DNA from: Dendrobates tinctorius
Taxonomy: Eukaryota
Direction: 5' to 3'
Assembly (NCBI RefSeq): GCF_039654945.1
Contig: NW_027361864.1
Coordinates: 3,534,001-3,598,000, forward strand
Length of the DNA: 64,000 bases
This document shows, in pieces, positions 27,646 through 64,000 of the stretch. Made by a program: the position numbers and the translations under genes. Each line of letters opens with the position of its first letter. Position 1 is the first letter of the stretch. The notes beneath the pieces were generated by a model. It saw only the letters and a list, made by a program, of their open reading frames with translations, was not told the DNA's origin and searched no databases.

Positions 27646-28066
27646 CTTTAGACTGTCGACTAAAGAATGGTTTGGTTGAGTGTTTGGCCGGCAGCTATTT
27701 CGCCCACCTCGCTACAGAACACTCTTGAGAGAACTGCTGATAGACATCTCTGGTGGTGGCTCATCCCTTAGAAAACAAAAGGACAGACCGTGAAATTGGG
27801 CATACCAGATCCTTACATCTCCTAACTATTATCTGTAGCGTTCCCCATACACATTAAACTTGTCAGCCAAACCTGTGGATTTCGGCAGGTTCAGCTAACG
27901 TCAGTCTAATGTGTATGGTGGCTTTGCCACTCTCCTCTAAAATGAGCTTAGACAAGTATTTCTCCACCATATTGGTTTGACTGGTCATGAATATTGATGC
28001 ATTTATCACATTATTGTGTTCCTTCTAGGAGCGAGGATTCTAGATCAGAAACCTCAAACAGTGGAC

Positions 28067-28277
28067 ATGGGAAAAGACTACTACAAGATCTTGGGCATCC
28101 CTTCAGGGGCCAACGAAGATGAGATCAAGAAAGCCTATCGCAAAATGGCCCTTAAATACCACCCAGATAAGAACAAGGATGCCAACGCTGAGGACAAGTT
28201 CAAGGAAATCGCAGAAGCCTATGATGTTCTTAGTGACCCCAAAAAGAGGGCAGTGTATGACCAGTATGGAGAAGAAG
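28067..28277 (+). CDS. dnajb5: DnaJ (Hsp40) subfamily B member 5, coding exon 1 (J domain, HPD motif)
   Basis: [37 protein letters not shown]...YDQYGEEG; acceptor TTCTAG ending at 28028 (exon starts 28029); donor G|GTAAGG; 211-nt phase-1 exon typical of DNAJB1/4/5. Confidence 0.97.
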
Positions 28278-29735: not shown

Positions 29736-30328
29736 GTCTGAAGACAGGAGGTGGATCATCTGGTAACACTGGGAACTCCTTCCATTACACTTTCCACGGG
29801 GACCCTCATGCCACCTTTGCTTCTTTCTTTGGGGGCTCAAACCCCTTTGACATCTTCTTTGGCTCAGGTCGCACCCGTATGGGCAATGGCTTCGACCACG
29901 AAGACATGGACATTGAAGATGATGATGACGACCCCTTCAGTAACTTTGGGCGTTTTGGGGTGAACGGATTCCACCGGCGGCACCCAGATCAGTTGCACAA
30001 TCGACGGAAAGTGCAAGACCCCCCTGTCATTCATGAGCTTAAAGTGTCATTGGAGGAAATCTATCACGGCTGTACCAAACGAATGAAGATCACACGGAGA
30101 AGATTGAACCCAGATGGCCGGACAGTAAGAACTGAGGACAAGATCCTAAATGTGGTGATCAAGAAAGGTTGGAAGGAGGGTACCAAGATTACCTTTCCTA
30201 AAGAAGGGGATGCCACATCAGAAAACATCCCCGCAGACATTGTGTTCCTACTGAAAGACAAACCACATGCACATTTCAAGAGAGATGGGTCCAACATAAT
30301 TTATACAGCCAAGATCACCTTGAAAGAG
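29736..30328 (+). CDS. dnajb5: DNAJB5 coding exon 2 (G/F-rich linker and C-terminal substrate-binding domain)
   Basis: LKTGGGSSG...FHGDPHATFASFFGGSNPFD...GWKEGTKITFPKEGD...TLKE; TGCAG| acceptor and |GTGAGT donor; phases compatible. Confidence 0.97.
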
Positions 30329-30580
30329 GTGAGTGCGCTTTCTAAAAACATCTTCTGCACTTTAAGGGCATTTTACTCTTATATACAAATATCTGATTAG
30401 TGGCGCACCAGTAGCTGGACCCAATTTGGTAAGACACACAAGGATATTGCCTATTATTAGGGTTTGTAGATTTGAAGAACATGTCACACAAAACTTTAAA
30501 GACCGTTGGCTACAGTAGCTGAACAACAGTCCTAAACAAGCATGTAGCATAGAGGAGCAGTCTCTTATACAGCAGAATAC

Positions 30581-33787: not shown

Positions 33788-35423
33788 CAGTCATATGTTA
33801 AAGTTTGGGCACCCCTATTAATTTTAACCTTTTTTCTTTATAACAATTTTGGTTTTTGCAACAGCTATTTCAGTTTCATATATCTAATAACTGATGGACT
33901 CAGTTATATTTCTGGATTCAAATGAGGTTTATTGTACTAACAGAAAATGTGCAATCTGCATTTTAACAAAATTTGACCGCTGCAAAAGTATGGGCACCTC
34001 AACATAAAAGTGACATTAATATTTTGTAGAGCCTCCTTTTGCAAAAATAACAGCCTCTAGTCGCTTCCTGTAGCTATTAATGAGTTCCTGGATGAAGGTA
34101 TTTGTGACCATTCCTGTTTACAAAACAATTCCAGTTCAGTTAAGTTTGATGGTCGCCGAGCATGGACAGCCCGCTTCAAACCATCCCACAGATGTTCAAT
34201 GATATTCAGGTCTGGGGACTGGGATGGCCATTCCAGAACATTGTAATTGTTCCTCTGCATGAATGCCTGAGTAGATTTGGAGCGGTGTTTTGGATCATTG
34301 TCTTGCTGAAATATCCATCCCCTGCGTAACTTCAACTTCGTCACTGATTCTTGCACATTATTGTCAAGAATCTGCTGATACTGAGTTGAATCCATGCGAC
34401 CCTCAACTTTAACAAGATTCCTGGTGCCAGCATTGGCCACACAGCCCCAAAGCATGATGGAACCTCCACCAAATTTTACTGTGGGTAGCAAGTGTTTTTC
34501 TTGGAATGCTGTGTTTTTTAGCCTCCATCCATAACGCCTTTTTGCATGACCAAACAACTCAATCTTTGTTTCATCAGTCCACAGGACCCTCTTCCAAAAT
34601 GTAACTGGCTTGTCCAAATGTGCTTTTGCATACCTCAGGCGACTCTGTTTGTGGCGTGCTTGCAGAAACGGCTTCTTTCGCATCACTCTCCCATACTGCT
34701 TCTCCTTGTGCAAAGCGCGCTGTATTGTTGACCGATGCACAGTGACACCATCTGCAGCAAGATGATGCTGCCGGTCTTTGGAGGTGGTCTGTGGATTGTC
34801 CTTGACTGTTCTCACCATTCTTCTTCTCTGCCTTTCTGATAATTTTCTTGGCCTGCCACTTCTGGGCTTAACAAGAACTGTACCTGTGTTCTTCCATTTC
34901 CTTACTATGTTCCTCACAGTGGAAACTGACAGGTTAAATCTCTGAGACAACTTTTTGTATCCTTCCCCTGAAAAGCTATGTTGAATAATCTTTGTTTTCA
35001 GATCATTTGAGAGTTGTTTTGAGGAGCCCATGATGCCACTCTTCATAGGAGAATCAAATAGGAGAACTACTTGCAAGCGGCCACCTTAAATACCTTTTCT
35101 CATGATTTGATACACCTGGCTATGAAGTTCAAAGCTCAATGAGGTTACAAAACCAATTTAGTGCTTCAGGAAGTCAGTAAAAAGTAGTTAGAGTTCAAAT
35201 TTAAAAAATAAGGGTGCCCATACTTTTGCACCTGTCAAATTTTGTTAAAATGCAGATTGCACATTTTCTGTTAGTACAATAAACCTCATTTGAATCCAGA
35301 AACATAACTGAGTCCATCAGTTATTAGATATATGAAACTGAAATAGCTGTTACAAAAACCAAAATTGTTATAAAGAAACAAGGTTAACATTAGAAGGGGT
35401 GCCCAAACTTTAACATATGACTG
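33788..35423 (-). mobile_element. Tc1-family DNA transposon, full length (~1.64 kb, ~210-bp TIRs)
   Basis: TA|CAGTCATATGTTAAAGTTTGGGCACCCC ... GGGGTGCCCAAACTTTAACATATGACTG|TA; internal transposase ORF. Confidence 0.97.
34016..35076 (-). pseudogene. Tc1 DD34E transposase with a frameshifted C-terminus
   Basis: GRPRK, WTDETK, FQQDNDPKH and SPDLNIIE (D-34-E) are present; the canonical tail ELINSYRKRLEAVIFAKGGSTKY* is in another frame ending at 34016. Confidence 0.9.
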
Positions 35424-42306: not shown

Positions 42307-45300
42307 CGTGCTAGTATGTTTGAAAGTAGCTTGAAGGAGGGCGCTTTTTATGTTATTCACTGATAACGCCAGTAATCAAATGGTCAGAATGCTGCTGTAA
42401 CGCAGGATAATCTTAATAGTTGAAAATATCAGCGCAGCCTGGTCCTCCTGGACGTGGGTAAACACCACTTGTCACTCCCAAAAATGACTTGTAGGAGGTT
42501 TAGATAGTGATGTCACTCCCAAGAGTGACTTGTAGGAGGACTAGTGATGTCACTCCCAAGAATGACTTGTAGGAGGAGCTGGATAGTGAGGTCAAGTCCA
42601 AGAATGACTTGTACGAGTAGCTAGTGAGGTCACTCCCAAGAATGACTTGCAGGAGGAGCAAGATAGTGTCGTAGCTGCTTTTTGTTCTGACCAAGTGTCA
42701 GGTATGCCAGATCACCAGTGAGTCTGGATTGTGAGGTTTTCCGCCCTTCTGTTGCAAGCGCTTGGAGACAGAGACACAAGCCATGGTCAAATCACTTTAT
42801 CTGACGTAATGAAATATAAGACATGTTTTTATACCATTTACAACAATATGTGACTTTATGGAGCTCATTTGGCCCCCACCATCACCTCAGGGTCGTACCT
42901 TGTTTACAATGTACCCAGAACATGTTGTTGAGAACAAATATGATAACAAGTATAGTTTCCTTGAAGACAGAGACTACTAGTCTACATAAGAAGAACACAT
43001 AGCAATAATAGGCAAAAGGCAGTTGAAGTCTTAAAGGTAATTAAAGGGATATAAAGCAAACCATTAACTCTTCTATATCAATAGTAATGTCACTCCCTGG
43101 CTATTCATATTACTTGTGGTCTGTATTCATTGAATGTAATTTGCAGGGTGTATTTTTAAAGAAACTGCTCCCTCTGGGTAGTAGATAATGGATGTGGCAC
43201 AGACACACAAATGCCATCCAATCCATATGCGCCATATAAAGGTCATCAGGATTTCTGAGAGTGGGGCAGATACCGATCTGCTAGGTTGTCTTATTGTAGT
43301 TGGAGTTCATCTTTTGCATAGCTTTAAAACTCAGGTCCCCAAAGACTATTACCTAGATTTTCCTCTTTATACACTAGGCTTGCGTGGGTGTATTCATATA
43401 CAGTACCTCATTGTAAGGGAGGCTCCTAAAATAAGCATGTATGTGACAAGATGTCAAACAGGTAGCACCGCAAAGCACTTGTATAGACGGAGTCTGCGCT
43501 TTTAAATATTGTAGCAGTAAACATAATTAAAAGATTAAAAGTATAAATCCATCAATCTTTAGATGCTGGGGCAGAAGTATGAAATCCATCCAACTATAAC
43601 ACTGGCCATGAATCAGAGCTCAACTTGCTGCCACGTGATAGGGAGAAGAGCGGCCATCGGACCTGGTGCTGTTTTCTATGATGGATCTTCTGAATTTTGC
43701 TAGTAAAATCTATAGAGGAGAATGGAGCTACAATAATACTGAACCCTATGTACAAGGGTATACTGCTACCTAGTTACTGTATATATACAAAAATGTAACT
43801 ACTGTAATACTGCTCCCATGTGTAAGAATATACAGTTGTGCTCAAAAGTTTGCATACCCTGGCAGAATGTTTGCTTTCTTTGCCCTTTTTCAGAGAATAT
43901 GAATGATAACATCAATACTTTTTCTCCACTCATGGTTAGTGGTTGGGTGAAGCCATTTATTGTCAAACTACTGTGTTTTCTCTTTTTAAATCATAATGAC
44001 AACCCAAAACATCCAAATGACCCTGATCACAAGTTCACATACCCTGGTGATTTTGGCCAGATAACATGCACAGAAGTTGACACAAATGGATTTTAATGGC
44101 TACTAAAGGTAACATCCTCACCTGTGTCCTGTTTGCTTGTAGTCAGTGTGTGTGCATAAAAGCTGAGTGAGTTTCTGGGATCCAGACAGACTCTTGCACC
44201 TTTCATCCAGCCACTAACGTTTCTGGATTGTGAGTCATAGGGAAAGCAAAAGAATTGTCAATGGATCTATGGGAAAATGTAGTTGAACTGTATAAAACAA
44301 GAAAGGGATACAAAAAGATATCTAAGGAATTGTTAATACCAGTCAGCAGCGTTCAAACTGTGATTACCAAATGGAAAATCAGGGGCTCTGTAAAAACAAA
44401 ACCACGGTAAGGTAGACCAAGAAAAATTTAATCCACAACAGCCAGGAAAATTCTTCGGGATAAAAAGAAAAACTCTGTATAATATCAGGTGAAATACTGG
44501 ACTCTCTGAAAACTAGCAGTGTGGCTGTTTCTGTTTCAAGATTCACAAGAAGGAGGCACTTGAAGAAAGTGGGCTGCATGGTTGAGTCGCCAGAAGAAAG
44601 CCATTACTGCGCAAATGCCACAAAGTATCTCACCTACAATACACAAAACAGCACAGAGACGAGCCTCAAAACTTCTTGAGCAAGGTAATTTGGAGTGATG
44701 AGACCAAAATTGAACTTTTTGCCACAACCATAAATGTTACATTTGGAAAGAGATCAACAAGGCCTATGATGAAAGGAACACCATTACTACTGTAAAGCAC
44801 GTGATAGGCGTCGGATTTCCGGCGCTGCACAGCGGGAATCCCGAGCTTTGCCTCCGACGGTCTCCCATTCCTTCCCAGCCACAGAGGAGCTTGCTCAGCA
44901 AACTCGTCGGTCCCGGCGCTCTGTCCAGACCAGCTCCGTGGGTTTGCTTGCTGCTGCCACCACCCCTAGTTCAGCTTTGGCAATGCATGCTGCTCAGCAG
45001 CAAGATCCTCCAGGGACTAAGTCCTCATGTCGGGCCACTGAGCATGCCTGTGGAGTGATCTCCCATTGGAGATCAAAGGTCATGTGCTCAGGTCCTGCTC
45101 GTGTTCGGATTGGCCCATCCGAGAAGCAAGGAGGATCACGGACGCCTGCGGCTATAAAAGGTTCGCATGGCCGCTTGGCCATGTGCTAAGATAGACTCAA
45201 ATAGTTTGGTGTGTATGATGATGGATGCATGTATCTGGTGTCTGACTCATTATGAAACCCCTACCCTTTGATACGTCTGTTGTTAGGGTTTAGAGACAGA

Positions 45301-45720
45301 GTCAGCGCCTGCTAGTGGCTAGCCTGTAGGCCACAGTGCATACCGGCTGTCTGCACACGCCATTTATTTGATCCCTGTTGGTATCGCAGTCGCGGTACCG
45401 GGCGCTAGCGGTCTAGAGGGACTTCAGTCCTGCTGTCTAAGGGCTGAGTTCTGTGACGTTACGCTAGCGCTTACTCTGCCGAGCTCTGTGAGCGAAAACA
45501 GGCTACGGCATCTATTATTTGCGGTAGTGCGGCTCTAAGTCATAAGAGTTCGCCTCGGTACACCTTGGGTGAGGTTAACCCCGTGTGTGCCGTTATTTAA
45601 CCGCCATATCGCGTCCGCCATTACCGAGCAGCAGTTAACACCTCTGCACGGTGGACCCCGGGCTGCGAACGCACCTAAACACCATCTTATTATTTGGTGT
45701 GTTCCGCCAGCCCTTAACAT

Positions 45721-45731
45721 TATCTTAGCGC
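45721..45731 (+). promoter_or_regulatory. Self-priming PBS (complementary to the element's own predicted transcript 5' end)
   Basis: TATCTTAGCGC is the reverse complement of GCGCTAAGATA (3' LTR 50247-50257; GTGCTAAGATA in the 5' LTR at 45183-45193), which starts 30 nt after the start of TATAAAA. Confidence 0.82.
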
Positions 45732-45747
45732 CAGGGTCTGGCCGATA

Positions 45748-46635
45748 ATGGCGGATGAACAACGACTGCATAGGTACATCCAGCAGCTGGAGGGTAGATT
45801 GGCAGCGCTAGAGCGTTCCACCTCAGCTGCGGATGTTACCTCGGTTGCCGTTCAGGCAGCTACAGGGGCTGTCGCTCGTGTCTCCACGGCCAGTCCTGCC
45901 CCGACCTTGTCCCGCCTCCCGCTGCCCGAGAAGTTCTCAGGGGATAGTGCTTCGTGTAGGGGTTTCGTGAGTCAGTGCTCCATTCACCTAGAGCTGCTGG
46001 CTACACGATTTCCCTCTGAGCGGGCCAAGGTGGGATTTATCATCTCCCTCCTGTCGGGCAGGGCCTTGGAATGGGCCACTCCACTGTGGGAGCGTGGGGA
46101 TCCCCTGGTACAGAGTGCCACCCACTTCTTGGTCGCTCTGAAACAGGTGTTCCTGGGACCTCAGGTCACACATGATACGGCACTCCAGTTGCTGGCGCTA
46201 ACCCAGGGTTCGTCTTTGGTCAGCCAGTATGCCATCCTCTTCAGAACTCTGGCCTCTGAGCTGGAGTGGCCAGATAAGGTGCTCATACCCATATTCTGGA
46301 GAGGCCTGGCTGATCATTTCAAGGACGCCCTGGCCACCAGGGAGGTGCCCACCACCCTAGAGGAGCTCATTACAGTCTCCACCCGGATTGACGTTCGCTT
46401 CACTGAGCGAGGGTTGGAGCGCTCCAGGTCCCGCCAACGCTATAAGTTGGCTCCAAATTTTGCCAGACCGCTGGAACCCCTCGGCCCACCGCCTGAGCCT
46501 CCAGAGGCCATGGAGGTGTCCCGCACAGGTTTCAGGGCCCGGTCCGTGCGGGTACCCCCAGTCTGCTTCCGTTGTCGGCAGACTGGGCACCACGCTAACC
46601 AGTGCCCACAGCGGCCGGGAAACGCCCCCGTCTAG
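45748..46635 (+). CDS. Retrotransposon Gag with a CCHC zinc knuckle
   Basis: LPEKFSGD..CRGF..QC, LLSGRALEWATPLW, CFRCRQTGHHANQC; intact 295-aa ORF. Confidence 0.93.
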   Translation: MADEQRLHRYIQQLEGRLAALERSTSAADVTSVAVQAATGAVARVSTASPAPTLSRLPLPEKFSGDSASCRGFVSQCSIHLELLATRFPSERAKVGFIISLLSGRALEWATPLWERGDPLVQSATHFLVALKQVFLGPQVTHDTALQLLALTQGSSLVSQYAILFRTLASELEWPDKVLIPIFWRGLADHFKDALATREVPTTLEELITVSTRIDVRFTERGLERSRSRQRYKLAPNFARPLEPLGPPPEPPEAMEVSRTGFRARSVRVPPVCFRCRQTGHHANQCPQRPGNAPV

Positions 46636-49600
46636 TGGTTATCGGAGGGGGCCTACTAGACACAGCTAATTTCTCCTCCAAGCTCCTGTTTAAAGGGGCG
46701 TTAGAGTTTGAGTCTTCCACTCTGATGGTGGAGGTTTGCGTGGACTCTGGGGCGGAGGGCAACTTTATGTCATCTGCCTTCGCTCAACAACACGCAGTCC
46801 CTCTGGTCTTGCTACCTCAGCCAGTCACCATTAGGGTGGTGAATGGGGCGACACTCCCGTCCCAAATCACCCACCAGACGGCTCCACTGAGACTCTCACT
46901 GTCTCCGTCTCATCAGGAGATGCTGTCTCTCCTTGTGATGCCAGAAGGTATCGACCAGGTCCTCCTAGGGGTTCCCTGGTTACGGGCCCACTCTCCCCAC
47001 ATAGACTGGTCCTCGGGGAAAATCCTTGCTTGGAGTAAGTCCTGCGAGGGTAGGTGTCTGAGGGACTGCATTCAGGTCGCTACTTCTGAGGTTCCTGCAG
47101 ATCTCTCCTCGCTTCCCAAGCCATATCGGCAGTATGCAGACGTTTTCTCCAAGAAGGTGGCGGAGATCCTTCCGCCGCACCGCCCTTACGACTGTCCTAT
47201 TGACCTCTTGCCCGGCGCTGAGCCTCCCCGGGGTCGAGTATACCCCCTATCTCTCCCAGAGACAGAGGCCATGTCGCAGTATATCAGGGAGAATCTGGCA
47301 AGGGGATTCATTAGGAAGTCGGTGTCCCCGGCGGGAGCGGGATTCTTCTTTGTCCAAAAGAAGAATGGGGAATTACGTCCGTGCATCGATTACAGGGGAC
47401 TTAACGCCATAACCGTTAAGAACAAGTATCCTCTGCCCCTGATATCGGAACTATTTGATAGGCTTCGGGGAGCGAGAGTGTTTACTAAGCTTGATCTGCG
47501 GGGAGCCTATAACCTGATTCGCATCCGTGATGGGGACGAATGGAAGACGGCATTTAACACCAGAGATGGGCACTATGAATATCTGGTGATGCCCTTCGGG
47601 CTATGTAACGCCCCAGCCATCTTCGAAGATTTTGTGAACGATATCTTCCGGGATATGCTTGCCACCTCGGTAGTAGTCTATCTGGATGATATTCTTATTT
47701 TTTCTCCAGATATTGACTCCCACCGGAGAGATGTTCGCAAAGTTTTCGATCTCCTGCGGGCCAACTCCCTCTATGCCAAATTGGAGAAATGTGTGTTTGA
47801 GCAGGAGTCCTTGCCCTTCCTGGGTTACATCATCTCAGCCCAGGGTTTGGCCATGGATCCTGCCAAGCTACAGGCGGTGATGGATTGGCAGGAACCCCAT
47901 TCTCTCAAAGCGGTGCAGCGCTTTATGGGGTTCATAAATTACTATCGCCAATTCATTCCCCATTTCTCAACTTTGGTTGCACCCGTGGTAGCCCTCACCA
48001 AGAAGGGTGCGAACCCCAAACTGTGGTCGGAGACTGTCTCCAAGGCCTTCGCCTCCATTAAGTCCCATTTTGCTAGCGCTCCCATTCTACATCGCCCTGA
48101 TGTAGATAAGCCATTCATTCTAGAAGTGGATGCCTCCTCCGTCGGTGCTGGGGCGGTCCTTTTCCAGAAGGACTCGCAAGGTCGGAAGCACCCATGCTTC
48201 TTCTTCTCCAAGACCTTCACACCGGCGGAGAGGAATTATTCCATCGGGGACAGGGAGTTGCTAGCAATGAAGCTGGCCTTCTCAGAATGGAGACATCTCC
48301 TGGAGGGGGCTCGCCATCCTTTCCAGGTGTTCACCGATCACAAAAATTTGGTCTATTTGCAGACGGCTCAGCGGCTGAATTCTCGTCAGGCCAGATGGTC
48401 CTTGTTCTTCTCCCGGTTCCATTTCACACTACATTTTCTCTCCGGGGAGAAGAACGTCCGAGCCGATGCTCTTTCTCGCTCTGTGGTGTCATCAGAGGAG
48501 GAGGAGGAGGAGCCTCGACTGATAGTCCCATCGGAGAGCCTGAGGACCGTGGCTCAGGTTGCTCTTGAGTCTGTACCTCCGGGCAAGACTTTTGTCGCTG
48601 TCCATCTGCGACCGGAGGTCCTCTCGTGGGCTCATTCGTCCAGAGTGGGAGGTCATTTCGGGATCAAACGGACCACTGAACTACTGGCGAGGACGTACTG
48701 GTGGCCGCATATGGCCCGTGACGTCAAGGACTATATTCAGGCGTGCGTCTCTTGCGCCTAGAATCGGCCCTCTCGGCAGCGGCCCGCTGGGTTACTCTAT
48801 CCTCTGCCGGTTGCAGACAGGCCCTGGGAGATGGTTGGTATGGACTTTGTGGTGGGTCTGCCCAAGTCCAGTGGCAGCACCGTCATCTGGGTGATCACCG
48901 ATCATTTCTCCAAGATGGTGCACCTAGTACCACTCTCTCGGCTACCGTCGGCACGAGGCCTAGCAGCATTGTTCATTAAACATGTTTTTCGCCTACACGG
49001 CATGCCGGATAAGATTGTCAGCGACCGGGGTCCCCAGTTTGCTTCTCGGTTCTGGAGAGAGCTCTGTTCTCTGCTCAGCATTGAGCTAAATCTCTCTTCG
49101 GCCTATCATCCCGAGACGAATGGGTTGGTGGAGAGAGCCAACCAGACCCTGGTGACATATCTGCGACATTTTGTCTCGTCTAGGCAGGATGATTGGGCAT
49201 CATTACTGCCGTGGGCGGAGTTTGCCTTGAACAACGCGGTAGCCGATTCCACCGGTCAGACCCCATTTCTCTTAAATTACGGTCAGCATCCGCGCGTCCC
49301 CGTGCCCATGCCCGTGTCATCCACCGACTCTAGGGTGGCAGACTGGGCGGTGGAAGCACGTGACATTTGGGACCGCACGCCGGATGCTATCCGGGTTTCC
49401 AAGGAGAGAATGAGGTCCTCCGCTGATACCCGCCGGCGCCCTGCTCTGACCTTTGCCCCTAGCGACTTAGTGTGGCTCTTTGCCCGTAACATCAGACTGC
49501 GGGTGGAATCCGCTAAGTTCGCACCACGCTACATCGGTCCTTTCAAGGTCCTCGAGCAGATTAATCCTGTGGTCTACCGTCTAGCCCTTCCACCACACTT

Positions 49601-49868
49601 GGCTATCTCGGACACGTTTCATGTGTCTCTCCTCAAGCCAGTTCACATGTCTCGGTTTTCTGAGCCAGCTGCCAGAACATCAGATCTGTCATCTGACGAG
49701 TTTGAGGTCAATGCCATCGTGGGATGCAAGGTGATGCGGGGCAAAAAGTTTTACTTGGTGGATTGGAAGGGTCATGGTCCAGAGGCCCAGACCTGGTGGA
49801 GAATATCCACGCTCCTCTTCTCATTGCAGAGTTTGAGCAGAGCGAGGCTCAGAGAGGAGGGGGGGTAA
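46602..49868 (+). pseudogene. Pol polyprotein (protease DSGA, RT YLDD, RNase H, integrase DDE, chromodomain) with a premature stop
   Basis: In-frame TAG at 48759-48761 just after the integrase zinc finger; the same frame resumes (ORF 48831-49868); small frameshift in the chromodomain near 49795. Confidence 0.93.
46617..46679 (+). promoter_or_regulatory. -1 ribosomal frameshift signal (G GGA AAC plus predicted pseudoknot)
   Basis: Slippery heptamer 46617-46623 in gag frame, pol in the -1 frame; stem GTCTAGTGG/CTACTAGAC; loop GGAGGGG pairs with CTCCTCC. Confidence 0.8.
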
Positions 49869-51471
49869 TGTTAGGCGTCGGATTTCCGGCGCTGCACAGC
49901 GGGAATCCCGAGCCTTGCCTCCGACGGTCTCCCATTCCTTCCCAGCCGCAGAGGAGCTTGCTCAGCAAACTCGTCGGTCCCGGCGCTCTGTCCAGACCAG
50001 CTCCGTGGGTTTGCTTGCTGCTGCCACCCCTGGTTCAGCTTTGGCAATGCATGCTGCTCAGCAGCAAGATCCTCCAGGGACTAAGTCCTCATGTCGGGCC
50101 ACTGAGCATGCCTGTGGAGTGATCTCCCATTGGAGATCAAAGGTCATGTGCTCAGGTCCTGCTCGTGTTCGGATTGGCCCATCCGAGAAGCAAGGAGGAT
50201 CACGGACGCCTGCGGCTATAAAAGGTTTGCATGGCCGCTCGGCCATGCGCTAAGATAGACTCAAATAGTTTGGTGTGTATGATGATGGATGCATGTATCT
50301 GGTGTCTGACTCATTATGAAACCCCTACCCTTTGATACGTCTGTTGTTAGGGTTTAGAGACTGAGTCAGCGCCTGCTAGTGGCTAGCCTGTAGGCCACAG
50401 TGCATACCGGCCGTCTGCACACTTGCACACGCCATTTATTTGATCCCTGTTGGTATCGCAGTCGCGGTACCGGGCGCTAGCGGTCTAGAGGGACTTCAGT
50501 CCTGCTGTCTAAGGGCTGAGTTCTGTGACGTTACGCTAGCGCTTACTCTGCCGAGCTCTGTGAGCGAAAACAGGCTACGGCATCTATTATTTGCGGTAGT
50601 GCGGTTCTAAGTCATAAGAGTTCGCCTCGGTACACCTTGGGTGAGGTTAACCCCGTGTGTGCCATTATTTCACCGCCATATCGCGTCCGCCATTACCGAG
50701 CAGCAGTTAACACCTCTGCACGGTGGACCCCGGGCTGCGAACGCACCTAAACACCATATTATTATTTGGTGTGTTCCGCCAGCCCTTAACAGCACGGAGG
50801 TGGATCGCTAATGTTTTGGGGATGTGTGAGCTACAAAGGCACAGGAAACTTGGTCAAAGTTGAAGGAAATATGAATGCAGCACATTATCAGCAAATACTG
50901 GAGGCAAATTTGCACTCATCAGCCTAGAAGCTGCGCATTGGATATTCTTGGACGTTCCAACATGACAACGATCTAAAACACAAGCCCAAGTCGACTTGTC
51001 CTTGGCTACAGCAGAACAAAGTGAAGGTTCTGGAGTGGCCATCTCAGTCTCCTGACCTCAGTATCATTGAGCCACTTTGAGGAGATCTCAAGCGCACAGT
51101 TCATGCTAGACAACCCAGGAATTTACAGGAACTGGAGGCTTTTTGCCAAGAAGAGTGGGCAGTTTTACCATCTGAGAAAATAACCTCATCCACAACTACC
51201 ACAAAAGACTTCCAGCTGTCATTGATGTTCGAGGGGGCAATACACGGTATTAAGAAATGGGGTATGTGAACTTTTGAACAAAGTCATTTGGATGTTTTGG
51301 GTTGTCATTATGATTTAAAAAGAGAAAACATACTAGTTTGACAATAAATGGCTTCACCCAAAGACTTACTATGAGTGGAGAAAAAGTATGGGTGTTATCA
51401 TTCATATTCTTTGAAAAAAGGCCAAGAAAGGAAAAATTCTGCCGGGGTATGTAAATATTTGAGCACAACTA

Positions 51472-55197: not shown

Positions 55198-55452
55198 TTG
55201 TGCCAAAACACAACGAATTCTCTGTGTTTTACAGTGTCAGAAAACTGCATCTAATGCAAGTCTGTGGGAAAAATCTGCATATAAAACTGGAAATGGACTA
55301 GTGATGAGAGTGTCTTCAGCGTGCTCGAATGCTATGTTTGAGGCCCCGCGGCTCTTTGACAGCCGCAACACATGCAAGGATTGACCGTTTGCCTTAGGCC
55401 TCATTCACACGTCAATATTTTTGCATCAGTGTTTGTATGCCAAAACCAGCAG

Positions 55453-56770
55453 TGTCTTACATCACAGGACAGGTGTCAGTCTCACACCTGTAGCTATGAA
55501 AGTCTTCGAAAGAATTATGATGTCCCACCTGATAAAATTCACGCAGAAGCTATGGGACCCGCTTCAGTTTGCCTATAAGGAGAATCGTTCGGCAAACGAC
55601 ACTGTCAATCTGGCACTGAAGTACATTTTGGATCATACAGATGAACTGCACTCATATGTCCGGATTCTTTTCATGGACTTTAGCTCAGCGTTCAATACCA
55701 TTGATCCGAATTTACTTCATAAGAAAATGGTAGCTCTTGGAGTCCCTCTCAACTTACGCTTGTGGATTTATACCTTCCTGACAGCCAGGATACAGAGTGT
55801 AAAAGTTGGACCATTCACTTCAGACACCTTGGTCACAAACATCGGGGCACCTCAGGGGTGTGTTTTGTCCCCGTTACTGTTTTTTTCTCTATACGAATGA
55901 TTGCATCTCTTCAGCAGACTCAGTAAAAATCTTGAAATTTGCCGATGATATGACACTGATTGGTCTCATCAGGGGAAATGCTGAAGACTTGTATCGGAGT
56001 GAGGTGGAAAGAATATGTGACTGGTGTAAAGCCAATAATCTTGTACTCAACACTAAAAAAACTGCTGAGATGGTTGTGGATTTTAGGAAAGATCAACATG
56101 AGATACTTCCAATCTACATCCATGACGAAGTGGTTCTTAGGGTCACAGAGACCAAATTCCTTGGTGTTATCATCTCTCATGATCTTAAATGGGGGAAAAA
56201 CGTGGATGCTGTTATAAGAAAAGCACAACAGAGGATGTTCTTCCTGCGTCAGCTGAAAAGATATGGTTTGTCTAAGAATCTGCTGATCTTATTCTTTAAT
56301 GCTGTCATCAGATCTGTGATTTGTTCCTCTCTGATAGTCTGGTATGGGGGAGCCACTGCGCATGACAAACTCCGCTTACAAAGGACTTTCAGAACAGCAG
56401 AGAGAATTATAGGTTCCCCCCTGCCTAAAATCCAGGATCTTTATGATAAGAGTATTCGATCCCACGCATTGAAAATTTCATCCGATCCCTCTCACCCGGG
56501 ACACTCCTCATTCCAACTACTCCCTTCAGGACGTCGCTTCAAAGTCCCCAAATGCAGCACCAACCGCCATATGAACAGCTTTTATCCACTCTCTATTCAT
56601 CAATTAAATCATCATGTGTAGACTATATACTGTATCTGTCTTGTTAGATGTTACTTGTTGTATCTGTTGTTATATATTATGTTGCCTCTTTGCCACAAAG
56701 AATTCCTTGTATATGTGTAATATGTACTTGGCGATAATACATTTGATTGATTGATTGATTGATTGATTGA
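55453..56770 (+). mobile_element. 5'-truncated Rex1/Babar-clade non-LTR retrotransposon (RT fragment, frameshifted), inserted in a Harbinger-like MITE (55397-56855)
   Basis: DPLQFAY, YVRILFMDFSSAFNTI, GAPQGCVLSPLLF // LYTND, KFADD; frameshift at a T-run near 55880; (TTGA)n tail; host TIRs GGCCTCATTCACACGT/ACGTGTGAATGAGGCC. Confidence 0.88.
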
Positions 56771-56858: not shown

Positions 56859-57207
56859 GGGTCTGTGCACACGGTGCGGTTTCTACCGCGGATCCGCAGC
56901 AGAACTGCAGGTGATGTACAGTACCATTATAGCCTATGTAAGAAAAAAAAACGCTGTGCACATGCTGCGGATTTTTCCACGCGGTTTTTGTGCAGGAAAA
57001 AAAAAAAAGCACCATATCGCTTCTTTTGTGCGGTTTTACTGCAGTTTTCCACCTGCTCCATTCTACAAATCCGCAGGTGGAAAACCGCACAAAAACGGCA
57101 GTAAAACCGCATAAAAAAAAGGAAGAAATCCGCAGGAAAAATGCCGGTCACTTGATCTGCGGATTTAGTAAAATCAGCGGGAGGATCCGCACCGTGTGCA
57201 CAGAGCC
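56859..57207. mobile_element. PIF/Harbinger-like MITE
   Basis: GGGTCTGTGCACACGGTGCGG...CCGCACCGTGTGCACAGAGCC. Confidence 0.75.
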
Positions 57208-58021
57208 TCAAACTGTTTTAAAGCTGACAGTGTCCTTCGGAAGAGTTGACATTAGGGTTTGTTGACTCTTTTTTTTTTTTTTTAGGAGTTTTGCATTTAG
57301 GAGGAACATTTGGAAAGTTTCTGCTCTTAAAAAAATCTCAAAAATCTCAGTGTGAACACATGCTTATACTTCATTTTTCTGTGGAAAAGTTTAAAAAAAA
57401 TGTAACTAGGTAGAATATTTGAAAGAAGTTTTTGAGGAGGATCTTGGAGAAGATCCTTGTTTTCAAATAACTCTGTATCAGTATAGCCTCAGGACATGTT
57501 CACACAGGGTATTTTGATGTGGACAATGATATTGGATCTGCTCAAAATTCTCTGTGTGAACATACTCTGAGAGCCACTTAGGACAGACCCGTGCGTTATT
57601 GGCCTTTTTTAACCTTATCACAATCCTCATTATATGCTGATCTCCATTAAGCATTAGGTTTACCTTTTGACCTCTCCTCGCTCCAATGACTGTTGTCTAG
57701 GTGTTGTCACCTTTGGGCCGACACCACAATAATTGATGACACATCTCTTAAACCCATTATTTACGGGTCAGGAAATTGTCATTATTTAAGATTCCTGTAT
57801 ATTTATGTGACTGCTGTGCTTTAGTCGAGACTTGTGGATCAGTGGTCTACAAGGCCACATGGTCGTGGTGGAAGTACAACCCTTCACATGTTGCAGGCTT
57901 TGCTGGCATGCTGGGAAATGTAGTTTTACCACAGCTTTCAGTTCATTGAGAAGAAGTCCACCAAACCTGACTCCTGGTTTCTACTTCCCTTCCCCCCTTT
58001 CTCCTATTCCAAATACTCCAA

Positions 58022-58654
58022 ATGGCGTTGGTGGCTACCTCTCTGTCCCCCTTAATTGGGGGGAACCCTATGGCCCAAGCAGCTCCATCCTTAGAGGAGA
58101 AGTTAATTTTGCAGCCGTCACTTACACTCCTGGTTTTTATCCTTCTCCCATGTGTGGTTTTGTTGTTCCTACTTAATTGCTTTTTGCTTTTATTTCGCCT
58201 TCCTGCCCTGTCCCTGGAAAAAAGGGGCAAAAGGCGAGGAGGGGTATCGAGGGGCAACAAGCAGCCAAGACATAACAGGCCAGCGCCCAGCTACCCAGAG
58301 AAGTCCACATGTGACAGCTACTCTGGGGTCGTCAGTCAAGGTTTGGAGGCTACGTTAGCCTTTGGTGAAAGTGCCCACACACCCCGCGATAGACTCCAGT
58401 CCACCAGAGAATGGTGCTATAAGCAGAACGAGACCCCAGTGAGACCCTACTGTCTTTGCACACCACCTGCCATGTCCATGCCTCGTGGTCCCTCAAGGAC
58501 TGGTCCATGCCCCATGGCCTTGTCACCAAACAGAGGGGTAAGCTGGAACGAAGTTGAAGACGGGGGAGGTGGCATAACGTCCTACAGCGAGCAAGAGACT
58601 CCGCAGAATGCTGCTCCACCCAACACGCCAGCCGCTCAGCAAAAGGCCCCTCCG
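58022..58654 (+). CDS. hwa: Huluwa-like single-pass membrane protein, exon 1 (TM helix, basic stop-transfer segment, PPNTP motif); alternative start at 58070
   Basis: LTLLVFILLPCVVLLFLLNCFLLLFRLP then KRGKRR; PPNTP at 58616-58630; CCG|GTGAGT phase-0 donor. Confidence 0.8.
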
Positions 58655-59889
58655 GTGAGTAAGATATCAAAAATCATAAAGAAAAACTCCACCTTCTTCA
58701 AAGTAGTTAATGAGAGCGCAAAAATGGTATTAACTCAACATCATCCCCCTCCTCTGCAGAAGTGTTTTGTTAATCAGCTGCTAGGAATTCAAATCTACCA
58801 TGCTTTACCCTGCAGGTTACTTGGATCGGAGCAGCAGATCGCAAACTGCCATGAATGGCTGATGGAACTAATAGGGAAACTGTGACACCTCAGACACAAG
58901 ATTTAGGGCTCGATTCATCATTTTGTTTCTGTCCGTTTTTTGGGATGAAAACCCAACAATTTTTGACTGTGATTTGCAACAAATTCATCAAATGATGTCT
59001 TTTTTTTTTTTCAAGTTGTTCTTTGTTGCTTAGTTAGTTTTCAGATTTTATTTTTTATAACAATGTGATTTTTTTTTTTCCCAGATGTTTTAGGTCACGT
59101 TCACACATTCAGTATTTGGTCAGTATTTTATCAGCATTTGTAGCCAAAGCCAAGAGCGGGTGATAAATCCAGAAGTGGTGATGGATTTCTATTATACTTC
59201 TCCTCTTCTGATTTTGGCTTACAGATAGTGATGTAAACTGTTGAGTGTGTGAACGAGGCCAAAGACAGATTCAAACAAAATTTGGTGCACTCCCCCGTGA
59301 TTTTATGTGAAAAAGTTGAATTGTTGAGACATTTTGCAAAACCTGCAACTTTTTTGCTAAAAAGTCATCAAAACAGTTAAAAGGCAGAAAAGAATTTAGG
59401 GCTTTGCATAAAATTTCGGAATCGCGCACGCCATTTTGATGAATTTCGCCTAAAAACCAGTGAAAACCACGAGTCAAAAAAGAAAAGTGACTTTAAAATA
59501 AATCGAATCAGCCCCTAAATGTTTTCTGTTTGAGGAGTAAAGCATGTTGGGGGTTGTAGTGCTCTACATACAGTATAGAGTATAATAACATTAAATTATG
59601 GTCATGTCGGGGCGTCAGATCTTGCTGGAGCTTGTAGTGCTCTTTGTTTTATAGTACGATAACATGGTATTATTATTGGGACATGTTGGGGGTTGTAGTC
59701 AAAGTGCCTGATTCATCAAGAATGGCGTTGACACCGCTTTTGATGAGGCCGTGCTGGAGTCGTATGCCTCTTCATGAATCGGGACTGTCAGAGAAGTGGC
59801 GCGTCGTCTCCCTGTCCCACCGCAGCTTTACCCACTTTGGCAGATTTGGGAGAAAAGTCTTTGTTGAACCGGCGCCTTGGTATATAATG

Positions 59890-61200
59890 TTTAGTGGTCA
59901 GATCTTGCTGGGTGTTGTAGTTCAACATATGTAGTTCAACATATATAGCATTGTATTATGATCATGTGTAGTGGTCAAGGTCTTGCTGGATGTTGTAGTT
60001 CAACATATATAGCATTGTATTATGATCATGTGTAGTGGTCAGGTCTTGCTGGGTGTTGTAGTTCAACATATATAGCATTGTATTATGATCATGTGTAGTG
60101 GTCAGATCTTGCTGGGTGTTGTAGTTCAACATATATAGCATTGTATTATGATCATGTGTAGTGGTCAGGTCTTGCTGGGTGTTGTAGTTCAACATATATA
60201 GCATTGTATTATGATCATGTGTAGTGGTCAGGTCTTGCTGGGTGTTGTAGTTCAACATATATAGCATTGTATTATGATCATGTGTAGTGGTCAGGTCTTG
60301 CTGGGTGTTGTAGTTCAACATATATAGCATTGTATTATGATCATGTGTAGTGGTCAGATCTTGCTGGGTGTTGTAGTTCAACATATATAGCATTGTATTA
60401 TGATCATGTGTAGTGGTCAGGTCTTGCTGGGTGTTGTAGTTCAACATATATAGCATTGTATTATGATCATGTGTAGTGGTCAAGGTCTTGCTGGGTGTTG
60501 TAGTTCAACATATATAGCATTGTATTATGATCATGTGTAGTGGTCAGGTCTTGCTGGGTGTTGTAGTTCAACATATATAGCATTGTATTATGATCATGTG
60601 TAGTGGTCAGATCTTGCTGGGTGTTGTAGTTCAACATATATAGCATTGTATTATGATCATGTGTAGTGGTCAGATCTTGCTGGGTGTTGTAGTTCAACAT
60701 ACACTATATAGCATTGTATTATGATCATGTGTAGTGGTCAGGTCTTGCTGGGTGTTGTAGTTCAACATATATAGCATTGTATTATGATCATGTGTAGTGG
60801 TCAGGTCTTGCTGGGTGTTGTAGTTCAACATATATAGCATTGTATTATGATCATGTGTAGTGGTCAGGTCTTGCTGGGTGTTGTAGTTCAACATATATAG
60901 CATTGTATTATGATCATGTGTAGTGGTCAGATCTTGCTGGGTGTTGTAGTTCAACATATATAGCATTGTATTATGATCATGTGTAGTGGTCAGATCTTGC
61001 TGGGTGTTGTAGTTCAACATATATAGCATTGTATTATGATCATGTGTAGTGGTCAGGTCTTGCTGGGTGTTGTAGTTCAACATATATAGCATTGTATTAT
61101 GATCATGTGTAGTGGTGAGGTCTTGCTGGGTGTTGTAGTTCAACATATATAGCATTGTATTATGATCATGTGTAGTGGTGAGGTCTTGCTGGGTGTTGTA
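59890..61200. repeat. 63-bp minisatellite, about 20 copies, in hwa intron 1
   Basis: GTGTAGTGGTCAGGTCTTGCTGGGTGTTGTAGTTCAACATATATAGCATTGTATTATGATCAT. Confidence 0.96.
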
Positions 61201-61397
61201 GTGCTTTCTTGTTTATAGTACAATAGAATAGCATTGTGATCGGGATATGTTGGGTGTTGTATTTATTGGCTGTAATGGCATTATGGTCATGTTGGGAGTT
61301 GTAGTGTGGTATGTATAGAATGTAATAGACCTTCATTGTGGATATGTTGGGAGTTGCAGTCTTGTATATTATGCACGTCACCGTCTCTTCTCTTCAG

Positions 61398-61593
61398 ATA
61401 ATGACTCCAAAGGTGAAGTTCTGCCATAAGACCAGCACTCAGAGGAAGACTGATGGGGTGTCGTTGAACCCTTTGGGGTCTATGCTCTTTGACCATGCCA
61501 GCAGCATCCCACCAGACGACACGCCAACTCGATTTTCAGCCAACAGCAGCTTCCAGGGTCCAGGACTGGATACTGACTTTGGGGTCAGCGCAG
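61398..61593 (+). CDS. hwa: Huluwa-like protein, exon 2
   Basis: CTTCTCTTCAG| IMTPKVKFCHKTSTQR...GPGLDTDFGVSA-G |GTGAGT; phase 0 in, phase 1 out. Confidence 0.8.
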
Positions 61594-61766
61594 GTGAGTG
61601 CATCCAGAGGCACCGGAAATGGCGGGAAGATGTAATGGGACCTTATATAGTGGCAAGATAATGAAGAGGAAGGGAGCGGGACTGTGCCCATCATCTGCCC
61701 AGGGAGCGGGACTGTGCCCATCATCTGCCAATCTCCTACCCATCAGTCCTCATGTCTCCCCCACAG

Positions 61767-61939
61767 GTGTCTCTCTGCACATCTTATCCTCAGACAGTGA
61801 CTCCTGCTCCCAGTCCTGGGCCTCAGGGATGGAATGGGATTACTACGACCCCTGTTACATGAGGAAGAACCGGCTCCGAAGAGAAACCTGGCAGAACCAC
61901 CAGCCCCCAGTCATCTGCAGCAAGCAATACTGGGTATAA
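61767..61939 (+). CDS. hwa: Huluwa-like protein, exon 3
   Basis: CCCCACAG| (G)VSLHILSSDSDS...MEWDYYDPCY...SKQYWV*; phase compatible; total 1002 nt = 333 aa. Confidence 0.82.
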
Positions 61940-64000
61940 GAGACTGGACACCAATGTGAGGACTATGCAGGTCTGCCTCACCCCCAAAAAAGTCATCACA
62001 GATTGTGCCAATTCCCCTGCACCCCAAAACTGCACCTTTGCTCTGTCTTGAACCTCACTCATTGACACCACCACCACCATCGCCCCCCTATTATCTCACC
62101 AATGAGTCACCAATACCCCCACCAAGATTGAAATTCCTACTCCACAACACCCCCATGTGTGATTATAGAATACTGCCCTGCACCCCTAGAATATACCGCT
62201 ATGACACGCTACTATTGCCTTTGCCCCCTAAGTTCACACACTTCCACCAGCCCCCCATCTTAGTTACTTGATCCGTGCTGCACCCCCATATACACTAGAT
62301 CCCACCTTTTACACGTGTTCCTTCCACTCACCCGTTTTACCCATCGTTTTTTTTTATTCCCATATTCTTCCAGCACCCCTCCTGACACCCCCCATACACA
62401 GAGTTCTTACCTGCACCCCATTAATTCTATGCCTAGTCTATAGCACCCTGCCCCATTAACATGCTGTTTGTCACACTTTGCCCATATTTACCTACTCCCC
62501 CAATACACAGCGCCCCCTTCAGGTGACACAAAGAGACTATTTCTAATATGTACAATTAACCCTTCACCCAACTCCCTAAAATTTCCCACCACTCTCATTA
62601 CACCCAGCACCCCAGTCTGCAGAGTTCTTGTCCGGGTCTCTCATGTTCAGATATTATTTTATTTTTTTGATAATTTCTATTTTTTTATCAAAAAATGTTT
62701 TTGCAATCAGATTTGTTAAAAAAAAAAAAAAAATTGTGTCCAACAGTGGAGCAGCAGCGCCTTCACCTGTATAATGGGACTAGCCTGGCGTCGCTGCCCT
62801 CCATTGTCTTTTTTAATGTTGTGGTGTCACTTTTACTTGTCTATGTCCGAGACAGCCATGGCGGATAAAACATGGAACACCGCACCGTGGGCTTCTAAAG
62901 CAACGGGCGAGGGCCGACCAAACAGTCTTTATAGTCGGAAATGATTACCTAATTATATACAGCACATGAGTTACAGGTTGTTGCTGGAAACAGTCAGCAA
63001 GCCTGCCGCTAGCCGTCACCCTGACAGCAGAGCTGGAGGAGACTATTTTTTTTTTAATTTTCTCTACATCACATTATTGTACAAAGATTGGTGAGAAGAT
63101 GACGCTCCCCAGAACACAAACAAGCTGAGGGATTTCAGCTCTGAAGCCTAAAGAATTGTGAATGCAGCTCTGTTCTAGAATGCAGGCTGTCATTTTAAAA
63201 TAGAAACTCCATTTATAGTTTTTAGATAGAGTAATTCTGTATGTGAATGGCCAAATGTTGCCCCTCTGCCATAATGTTTTGCTTTTGGGGGAGGGGTTGA
63301 TAAAAATTCAGTTTCGGACCCCAATTTGTTTGTGACCCATTTTCATGAGAAAATTGTACATCCGCCGTTCTGTCGCTTTTGCGGTATGTTTTGTGCATTT
63401 ATCCGTATTGTATGTGCCTTTGTGAGGTTTGTCGCCATCAGATGTCACGACTGCCAAAATAATTTTATTTATTCTAATTTATTTGTAGTTTTATTTATTA
63501 AAAAGATCCAAAGGGTTTTTTTTTGCCTTTCTCATTTACAAATTATTTCACCAATTTATATAGGATATGACCCAAATCTATCATCCTCTTTACACACTTT
63601 AAAAAAAAAAAAAAAAAAATCAAATAATGTGATTACTCCTTTTTATGTAAGAAGTTGTCACGATCTAATGTGAAAAATTATGTAATCTTACGAGAAAAAA
63701 AATCCTTATAGGATTTAGCCACCATTTCTTTCTTTCTGTCACCAGGTCAAAAGTGGTAATTTATTTGTTTTTTTTTTTTTTTTTTTATTCCCGCTGTTCC
63801 CCTGAATATTCCGATTTTTATTTTTTTTTAATCTGCCATCCGGTTCCAGAGATATGGGCCTTTTTAATTTGTGCTACTTTTTACGATCTTTACTAAGGGG
63901 GTGTGGCTCACAGGATTCTTTAGGGGCGTGTGTTCACGCTGTCCTACATAGCTGCCCTGTGAACCACACCCCTTTTGTAAAGCGTCTAAAAATTAGCCCC

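What the first reader, a model, noticed from the sequence alone, without database searches (positions are those of the whole stretch)
58022..61939. Hidden three-exon huluwa-like gene with PPNTP in place of PPNSP
Seen: three apparently unrelated ORF-track entries splice with canonical GT-AG sites and matching phases into a 333-aa protein with one N-terminal TM helix, PPNTP, GLDTDFGVSAGVSLHILSSDSD, EWDYYDPCY and C-terminal KQYWV. Established: Huluwa is a maternal single-pass protein that induces the dorsal organizer in zebrafish and Xenopus via Axin degradation and beta-catenin, and it depends on a PPNSP phospho-motif. Inference from recalled family motifs: this is the hwa orthologue with Thr as the phospho-acceptor. 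Such fast-evolving genes are easily missed by annotation.
Basis: partly seen in the sequence, partly recalled or inferred. Interest (0 to 1): 0.75.

Follow-up and report, generated by a model that had tools for sequence, protein, structure and literature searches.

The report
Ordinary huluwa gene of a poison frog
The three open reading frames do splice into a real, transcribed 333-residue gene, the poison-frog copy of huluwa (the maternal dorsal-axis determinant), but the gene is already annotated in dozens of amphibians and its PPNTP motif is the normal frog form, so it is ordinary.

Summary
Observation confirmed. Exons 58022-58654, 61398-61593 and 61767-61939 (+ strand) join through GT..AG introns in matching phases into 333 codons.

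Intron-less contigs from three runs of the same species and one run of a close relative carry both junctions exactly.

The three exon translations tile the 333-aa 'protein huluwa-like' of Ranitomeya variabilis end to end, at 90, 94 and 98% identity. About 35 relatives carry the huluwa name, including Xenopus laevis huluwa (E 7.5e-21) and a teleost huluwa.

All family blocks are present:
- an N-terminal transmembrane helix
- PPN(S/T)P
- KTSTQRK
- GLDxDFGxSAG..ILSSDSD
- EWDYYDP
- the KQYWV end

The three-exon structure is conserved. So is the position downstream of a DnaJ gene on the same strand.

PPNTP is the usual state in anurans and salamanders, Xenopus included. The literature already writes the motif as PPN(S/T)P and shows that S168T keeps activity. 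The gene is 'hidden' only from an ORF track.

Maternal expression and axis-inducing activity in this species are inferred, not shown. Low interest; already known.

The parts
57867..58021 (+). Inferred 5' UTR, at least about 155 nt. The start is approximate.
   Evidence: Contigs of X15 and X17 carry 788 nt 5' of exon 2, that is 633 nt of CDS plus 155 nt. In-frame stops lie 54 and 75 nt upstream of the ATG.
58022..58654 (+). Coding exon 1, 211 codons: short N-terminal ectodomain, transmembrane helix, disordered Pro/Ser-rich cytoplasmic part ending just after PPNTP.
   Evidence: It is 90% identical over 211 aa to residues 1-211 of P0001. The last 30 letters before the donor are found as the loose end in front of exon 2 in all four runs.
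58121..58195 (+). Transmembrane helix, about L34-F58, followed by the basic stretch RLPALSLEKRGKRRGG (N-out, C-in by the positive-inside rule).
   Evidence: The only hydropathy peak of exon 1 (maximum 2.96). It aligns with the conserved LTLLV..PCVVLLFLLNC block of the whole family. Topology is inference.
58616..58630 (+). PPNTP motif (residues 199-203; Thr202 codon ACG at 58625-58627), the presumed phospho-acceptor and GSK3-inhibitory motif.
   Evidence: It aligns with PPN(S/T)P of all relatives. Function is taken from PMC11576741 and PMC12758137 and was not tested here.
58655..61397 (+). Intron 1 (2743 nt, GT..AG, phase 0). It holds a 63-bp tandem array of about 20 copies at 59930-61202.
   Evidence: It is absent from the contigs: the loose end at 61397 continues with the end of exon 1.
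61398..61593 (+). Coding exon 2 (65 codons plus 1 nt). It holds the KTSTQRK block (61428-61448) and GPGLDTDFGVSA.
   Evidence: It is 94% identical to residues 212-276 of P0001. All four contigs cover it.
61594..61766 (+). Intron 2 (173 nt, GT..AG, phase 1). It holds a 30-bp direct duplication at 61671-61729.
   Evidence: The joint 'skips 173, GT..AG (cut +3)' is present in one contig in each of X15, X16, X17 and X4.
61767..61939 (+). Coding exon 3 (split Gly codon, 56 codons, TAA stop): SLHILSSDSD, EWDYYDPCY and the KQYWV C-terminus.
   Evidence: It is 98% identical to residues 278-333 of P0001. It is the most conserved part of the family, down to a teleost.
61940..63534 (+). 3' UTR, about 1.6 kb with no intron up to 63200. 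An ATTAAA hexamer lies at 63497-63502. The 3' end is approximate.
   Evidence: Contigs run unbroken from 61764 to 63200 and carry a further 330-334 nt. The end point is inference.

Best explanation
This is the single-copy huluwa (hwa) orthologue of a dendrobatid poison frog. It is a three-coding-exon gene transcribed into an mRNA of at least 2.75 kb.

The product is a 333-residue single-pass membrane protein. It has a 33-residue ectodomain, one helix and a largely disordered cytoplasmic tail.

By homology with zebrafish and Xenopus Hwa, the expected mechanism is as follows. The mRNA is expected to be maternal. The protein is expected to sit in the plasma membrane of future dorsal blastomeres. 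Thr202 in PPNTP is expected to be phosphorylated by GSK3 and/or CDK-type kinases. The phospho-motif then inhibits Axin-bound GSK3 as a pseudosubstrate, as the LRP6 PPPSP motifs do. This promotes Axin degradation, stabilises beta-catenin without a Wnt ligand and induces the dorsal organiser.

Shown here: the gene model, its transcription and splicing, family membership, motif conservation, exon structure and synteny.

Inferred only: maternal expression, localisation, phosphorylation of Thr202 and axis-inducing activity in this species.
For: - Gene model: read from the sequence.
- Splicing: one intron-less contig in each of three runs that hold 95-100% of the exon-1 words, and in one run of a close relative. 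Each shows the joint 61593/61767. Each has a loose end before exon 2 that occurs once in the window, at 58624-58653, directly before the exon-1 donor.
- Exon 1 search: 24 hits, of which 23 are named 'protein huluwa(-like)'. The best is Ranitomeya variabilis (333 aa, 90%, E 5e-119). X. laevis huluwa scores E 7.5e-21.
- C-terminal half: it reaches salamanders, a caecilian, a lungfish, lizards and a teleost 'protein huluwa' at E 6e-16.
- Tiling: the exon pieces tile P0001 exactly at the exon borders.
- Motifs: all family blocks are present.
- Reverse test: Hwa proteins of six species hit only these three exons in the 64-kb window.
- Exon structure: the same three-exon layout is found in Spea, Stigmatopora and Elgaria.
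- Synteny: a DnaJ + DnaJ_C gene lies upstream on the same strand in the window, in Spea and in Stigmatopora.
- Mechanism: taken from PMC11576741 and PMC12758137.
Against: - The runs' kind and tissue are not on record ('?'). RNA origin is inferred from the missing introns and the small contig sets, and maternal or ovarian expression is not shown.
- Only the window was searched in reverse, not the whole genome, so a second copy elsewhere is not excluded.
- Frog proteins lack the Arg at +4 after the S/T-P. PMC11576741 links that residue to Cdk16 preference, so the kinase may differ.
- No functional test exists for any dendrobatid.
Confidence: 0.93

Rival explanations
1. It is an expressed hwa orthologue whose role in this lineage is not, or not only, the maternal dorsal determinant. 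For example it might be expressed mainly in somatic tissues or be functionally relaxed in direct-care, large-egg poison frogs.
For: The tissue of the runs that hold the transcript is unknown. Exon 1 is only 90% identical to another dendrobatid and 39% to Xenopus, so the tail evolves fast. A killifish preprint listed (10.1101/2021.04.16.440199, title and abstract only) describes axis formation in the absence of Huluwa prepatterning in one fish lineage.
Against: Every functional block (TM, PPNTP, KTSTQRK, GLDxDFG..SSDSD, EWDYYDP, KQYWV) is intact, and exon 3 is 98% identical to other dendrobatids. That pattern indicates purifying selection on the same parts as elsewhere.
Confidence: 0.06
2. It is a paralogue ('huluwa-like' second gene) rather than the true orthologue of Xenopus and zebrafish hwa.
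For: NCBI's name for most hits is 'huluwa-like'. The whole genome of this species could not be searched.
Against: Only one such protein per species appeared in two searches, isoforms and fragments aside. The DnaJ-upstream, same-strand position is shared with a teleost 'protein huluwa' locus and with Spea. Exon structure is identical.
Confidence: 0.02
3. It is a decaying pseudogene or a chance concatenation of ORFs.
For: None beyond the lack of an annotated protein of this genome in the protein collection (one search shows no row for the window's own protein).
Against: The frame is open for 333 codons with the conserved start and stop. Splice sites are canonical. The spliced transcript is present in four runs at mean word depths of 70-155. 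The CDS part is less diverged from the relative than the 3' UTR (6 differences in 369 nt against 42 in about 1140 nt, plus indels).
Confidence: 0.01

Closest known systems
'Protein huluwa-like' of Ranitomeya variabilis (P0001, 333 aa) and of other dendrobatoids (Phyllobates terribilis P0007, Anomaloglossus baeobatrachus P0022)
   Same: Same length (333 aa), same exon borders and same motifs, including PPNTP and GLDTDFG. Identity is 90, 94 and 98% for exons 1, 2 and 3.
   Different: About 26 substitutions, mostly in the disordered exon-1 tail. The gene span is 3918 bp here against 3305 bp there. The 63-bp tandem array in intron 1 may account for the difference, but this was not tested.
Huluwa (Hwa) of Xenopus laevis and zebrafish, the experimentally characterised maternal dorsal determinant (PMC11576741, PMC12758137, and the 2018 work they cite)
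   Same: Single-pass membrane protein with a short ectodomain and a disordered tail. It has a PPN(S/T)P motif (X. laevis also has PPNTP), the TSTQRK block and the GLDSDFG block. Exon 1 matches X. laevis at E 7.5e-21 and 39% identity.
   Different: The cytoplasmic tail is highly diverged. The X. laevis entry found here is isoform X2, with a different C-terminus. Zebrafish has Ser (PPNSPVLR, with Arg at +4), whereas this frog has PPNTPAAQQK. A zebrafish sequence was not retrieved here; the teleost compared was Stigmatopora nigra (P0033).
PPP(S/T)P motifs of the Wnt co-receptors LRP5/6
   Same: It works like them. A membrane-anchored, phosphorylated Pro-rich S/T-P motif inhibits GSK3 as a pseudosubstrate. 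One Hwa motif grafted on LDLR-deltaN activates the reporter as LRP6 motif A does (PMC12758137).
   Different: It is not a family member. There is no LDL-receptor ectodomain, there is a single motif instead of five, Asn replaces the third Pro, and signalling is independent of a Wnt ligand. The authors call it convergence.

Membership tests
Huluwa (Hwa) | Significant sequence similarity to experimentally characterised Hwa and to proteins named huluwa | tested here: met
   Exon 1 matches X. laevis 'protein huluwa isoform X2' at E 7.5e-21. Of 24 hits, 23 are named huluwa(-like). The C-terminal half of the 90%-identical P0001 reaches a teleost 'protein huluwa' at E 6e-16. In the reverse tblastn, Hwa of six species hits only these exons in the window.
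Huluwa (Hwa) | Single-pass transmembrane protein with a short N-terminal ectodomain and a long cytoplasmic tail | tested here: met
   There is one hydropathy peak at L34-F58 (maximum 2.96) followed by a basic cluster. It aligns with the family's conserved TM block. Topology itself is inferred.
Huluwa (Hwa) | Conserved PPN(S/T)P motif in the tail | tested here: met
   PPNTP at residues 199-203 is in register with PPNTP or PPNSP of 33 relatives. The motif definition PPN(S/T)P is from PMC11576741.
Huluwa (Hwa) | Second conserved motif (RRSST in zebrafish) | tested here: inconclusive
   The tetrapod and lungfish block KTSTQRK is present at exon-2 residues 11-17. Its equivalence to zebrafish RRSST was not tested: no zebrafish sequence was retrieved, and the teleost P0033 does not align there.
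Huluwa (Hwa) | Conserved C-terminal blocks GLD(S/T)DFGxSAG-SL(H/R)ILSSDS(D/E), EWDYYDP and the KQYW(V/I/L) end | tested here: met
   All are present. Exon 3 is 98% identical to dendrobatid proteins and 55% to the teleost protein.
Huluwa (Hwa) | Conserved gene structure and genomic position | tested here: met
   Three coding exons with the same borders occur in Spea, Stigmatopora and Elgaria. A DnaJ/DnaJ_C gene lies upstream on the same strand in the window (28.0-30.4 kb), in Spea and in Stigmatopora. A CDC48/VCP-type gene lies downstream in Spea and Elgaria; that position is beyond the end of the window.
Huluwa (Hwa) | Maternal transcript, vegetally localised | not testable with these tools
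   A transcript is present in four runs, but their tissue and library are not on record.
Huluwa (Hwa) | Induces beta-catenin stabilisation and a body axis; depends on the S/T of the motif | not testable with these tools
   This needs a bench assay. The literature evidence is for zebrafish, Xenopus, amphioxus and sea squirt proteins only.
LRP5/6 co-receptors | LDL-receptor-type ectodomain with multiple PPP(S/T)P motifs | tested here: not met
   No Pfam domain was found in any exon. There is one PPNTP only, and the ectodomain is 33 residues. The resemblance is in mechanism only.

The most novel reading that the evidence does not exclude
The Ser/Thr state of the motif is lineage-structured. Thr is found in most anurans and in salamanders. 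Ser is found in the caecilian, lungfish, lizards, teleost and the pelobatoid frogs Spea and Pelobates. Together with the loss in frogs of the +4 Arg that favours Cdk16, this could mean that batrachian Hwa, this gene included, is switched on by a different kinase set than zebrafish Hwa.
Probability: 0.15. Interest if true: 0.35.

Novelty: already known. Interest (0 to 1): 0.12.

Why it matters
It matters little beyond annotation. The result gives this poison-frog genome a correct, transcript-supported hwa model: coding exons, an mRNA of at least 2.75 kb and a 3' UTR of about 1.6 kb. It confirms that the DnaJ-hwa neighbourhood is conserved from teleosts to frogs. The feature offered as the surprise, Thr instead of Ser in the phospho-motif, is the standard amphibian state. 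It is already described as PPN(S/T)P and functionally covered in the literature. The model may help anyone studying axis formation in frogs with large, terrestrial eggs.

Tried and rejected
- Pfam scan of the three exon translations found no family. There is no curated Hwa model, so this says nothing.
- Rfam scan of 57000-64000 found nothing.
- The locus of X. laevis P0021 is not on record, and the R. variabilis locus is listed without DNA. Synteny was therefore taken from Spea, Stigmatopora and Elgaria instead.
- Read laying was given 61210-63200 only. Junction 1 therefore rests on the loose-end letters, which occur once in the window directly before the exon-1 donor, not on a listed joint.
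- The large representative-protein search and structure prediction were not used. The protein was not left open by the word search, and its tail is described as disordered in the literature.
- All searches were exon by exon or used the stored homologue P0001.
- Pseudogene, chance-ORF and paralogue readings were considered and rejected (see rivals).
- The name dnajb5 for the upstream gene was not tested. Only the DnaJ and DnaJ_C domains and 73% and 50% identity to the teleost neighbour were shown.
Full report
**1. The observation**

Reading the sequence confirms every coordinate.
- Exon 1 runs from ATG 58022 to 58654. It has 211 codons and the donor CCG|GTGAGT.
- Exon 2 is 61398-61593. It has a pyrimidine-rich acceptor ending CAG, 65 codons plus one base, and the donor CAG|GTGAGT.
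- Exon 3 is 61767-61939, with an acceptor ending CACAG and a TAA stop.
- The phases match (0, then 1) and the total is 1002 nt, or 333 codons plus stop.
- In-frame TGA codons lie 54 and 75 nt upstream of the ATG.
PPNTP is at residues 199-203 (58616-58630).
- Exon 1 has one hydrophobic peak only, L34-F58, followed by a basic cluster.

**2. Transcription and splicing**

The run search with exon 1 found four runs of one species that hold 95-100% of its words. It also found several runs of a close relative that hold 59-64%.

Contigs of three of the same-species runs and one relative run were laid on 61210-63200.
- Each run has one contig of 2.2-2.76 kb that covers exon 2, skips 173 bases with GT..AG ends and continues through exon 3 to beyond 63200 without a further break. 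The tool's 'cut +3' places the joint at 61593/61767.
- In all four runs the letters in front of exon 2 are a 30-mer. In the same-species runs this 30-mer occurs once in the window, at 58624-58653, directly before the G of the exon-1 donor. The relative's version differs from it at two letters. This confirms junction 58654/61398, with the usual one-base ambiguity.
- The contigs leave 788 nt 5' of exon 2, which is 633 nt of coding sequence plus about 155 nt of leader.
- They also leave about 334 nt 3' of 63200. That ends about 30 nt after an ATTAAA at 63497.
- The runs' library type is not on record. I infer RNA origin from the absence of both introns and from the small contig sets. Tissue is unknown.

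**3. Identity**

- Pfam has no model for any exon.
- The word search with exon 1 returned 24 proteins. Of these, 23 are named 'protein huluwa' or 'protein huluwa-like'. All are from anurans.
- The best hit is Ranitomeya variabilis P0001 (333 aa, 90% identity, E 5e-119). Phyllobates terribilis scores 87% over the part its model contains. X. laevis 'protein huluwa isoform X2' scores E 7.5e-21.
- The window therefore comes from a dendrobatid poison frog other than these species. No row for the window's own protein appeared.
- The three exon translations tile P0001 end to end, with breaks exactly at ..APP|IMTPK.. and ..SA|G|VS... Identities are 90, 94 and 98%.
- A second search with the C-terminal half of P0001 extended the family to salamanders, a caecilian, a lungfish, lizards and a teleost 'protein huluwa' (E 6e-16).
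- The broad alignment and the motif table show these family blocks: the TM segment, PPN(S/T)P, KTSTQRK (tetrapods and lungfish), GLD(S/T)DFGxSAG-SL(H/R)ILSSDS(D/E), EWDYYDP and the KQYW(V/I/L) end. The window has all of them.

**4. Orthology by position and structure**

- tblastn of six Hwa proteins against the whole window hits only the three exons.
- The loci of Spea bombifrons, Stigmatopora nigra and Elgaria multicarinata have the same three coding exons.
- In Spea and in the teleost, a gene with DnaJ and DnaJ_C domains lies directly upstream on the same strand.
- The window has the same arrangement. The J domain is at 28067-28288 and DnaJ_C at 29741-30343, both on the + strand. They are 73% and 50% identical to the teleost neighbour.
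- Spea and Elgaria have a CDC48/VCP-type gene downstream on the opposite strand. The window ends before that position.
The name dnajb5 itself was not tested.

**5. The claimed peculiarity**

- PPNTP is not a departure. In the motif table, 22 of the 26 anuran entries and all three salamanders have PPNTP, X. laevis and Bombina included.
- PPNSP occurs in Spea, Pelobates, the caecilian, the lungfish, the lizards and the teleost. Ascaphus has PPNSS.
- PMC11576741 already writes the motif as PPN(S/T)P. It reports that Hwa is present in most chordates except birds and mammals.
- The same paper reports that alanine substitution of the corresponding Ser/Thr in amphioxus, sea squirt and frog Hwa reduces or eliminates rescue. 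It also reports that S168T largely preserves zebrafish Hwa activity.
- PMC12758137 reports that S168T does not affect reporter activity.

**6. Mechanism**

All of this section is inferred by homology.
- The phospho-motif binds and inhibits Axin-associated GSK3 as a pseudosubstrate. It does so more strongly than LRP6 PPPSP because of the Asn.
- This leads to beta-catenin stabilisation and SIAH1-dependent Axin degradation, enhanced by oligomerisation (PMC12758137).
In that model Ser168 phosphorylation by several kinases, Cdk16 among them, acts as the switch (PMC11576741).
- The frog sequences, this one included (PPNTPAAQQK), lack the Arg at +4 that PMC11576741 links to Cdk16 preference. This is the only detail here that might point to a lineage difference, and it is speculative.

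**7. Verdict**

The model is supported by transcript contigs, homology, exon structure and synteny.

Nothing about it is new in kind. The gene family, the motif variant and its functional equivalence are published, and close orthologues are annotated. Interest is low.

All tests were made exon by exon or with the stored homologue P0001.

Noticed in passing
window 59930-61202: A 63-bp tandem array of about 20 copies (98% matches) sits inside intron 1 of hwa. It produces the long spurious minus-strand ORFs (MLYMLNYNTQQDLTTTHDHNT repeated). It may explain why the gene spans 3918 bp here against 3305 bp in R. variabilis.
   Followed up: partly
window 28016-30400 (+); L001:5082-8390; L002:1-982: A DnaJ-type gene (J domain and DnaJ_C) lies upstream of hwa on the same strand. 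The same order is seen in a teleost and in Spea, so the neighbourhood is conserved. A VCP-type gene follows hwa in Spea and Elgaria. The name dnajb5 was not tested.
   Followed up: partly
window 44848-50253: An apparently intact LTR retrotransposon lies between the DnaJ gene and hwa. It has gag-like (45748-46635), protease/RT/RNase H (46602-48761) and integrase (48831-49868) ORFs on the + strand. It is flanked by near-identical ORF-bearing repeats at 44848-45189 and 49915-50253. This was read by eye only.
   Followed up: no
window 34057-35076 (-) and 55421-56621 (+): A 339-aa ORF resembles a Tc1/mariner-like transposase. Two overlapping ORFs resemble a reverse-transcriptase fragment of a non-LTR element about 1.4 kb upstream of hwa. 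Both were read by eye only.
   Followed up: no
P0018, P0007, P0021, P0006, P0013 (relatives): Ascaphus truei has PPNSS, so the last Pro of the motif is missing. The Phyllobates terribilis model (261 aa) lacks about 72 residues of exon 1 including PPNTP, probably an annotation or assembly artefact. The entries found for X. laevis and Dendropsophus ('isoform X2') and for Aquarana replace the EWDYYDP..KQYWV end with other sequence.
   Followed up: no
window 58616-58645: After the motif this frog has PPNTPAAQQK and other frogs have similar sequence. None has the Arg at +4 seen in zebrafish PPNSPVLR, which PMC11576741 links to Cdk16 preference.
   Followed up: no
window 61940-63200: The 3' UTR is unspliced and long. 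Against the relative's contig it shows 42 other letters in about 1140 nt plus many small indels. The 369 coding nt laid show 6 differences, including TAA to TGA at the stop. This is the stretch that another first-stage note proposes as a localisation element.
   Followed up: partly
window 9306-10256: A second tandem array gives a 316-aa ORF of repeated PPYNL(R/I)PLCI(T/I)S units, with a mirror ORF on the minus strand.
   Followed up: no
window 61671-61729: A perfect 30-bp direct duplication lies in intron 2.
   Followed up: no
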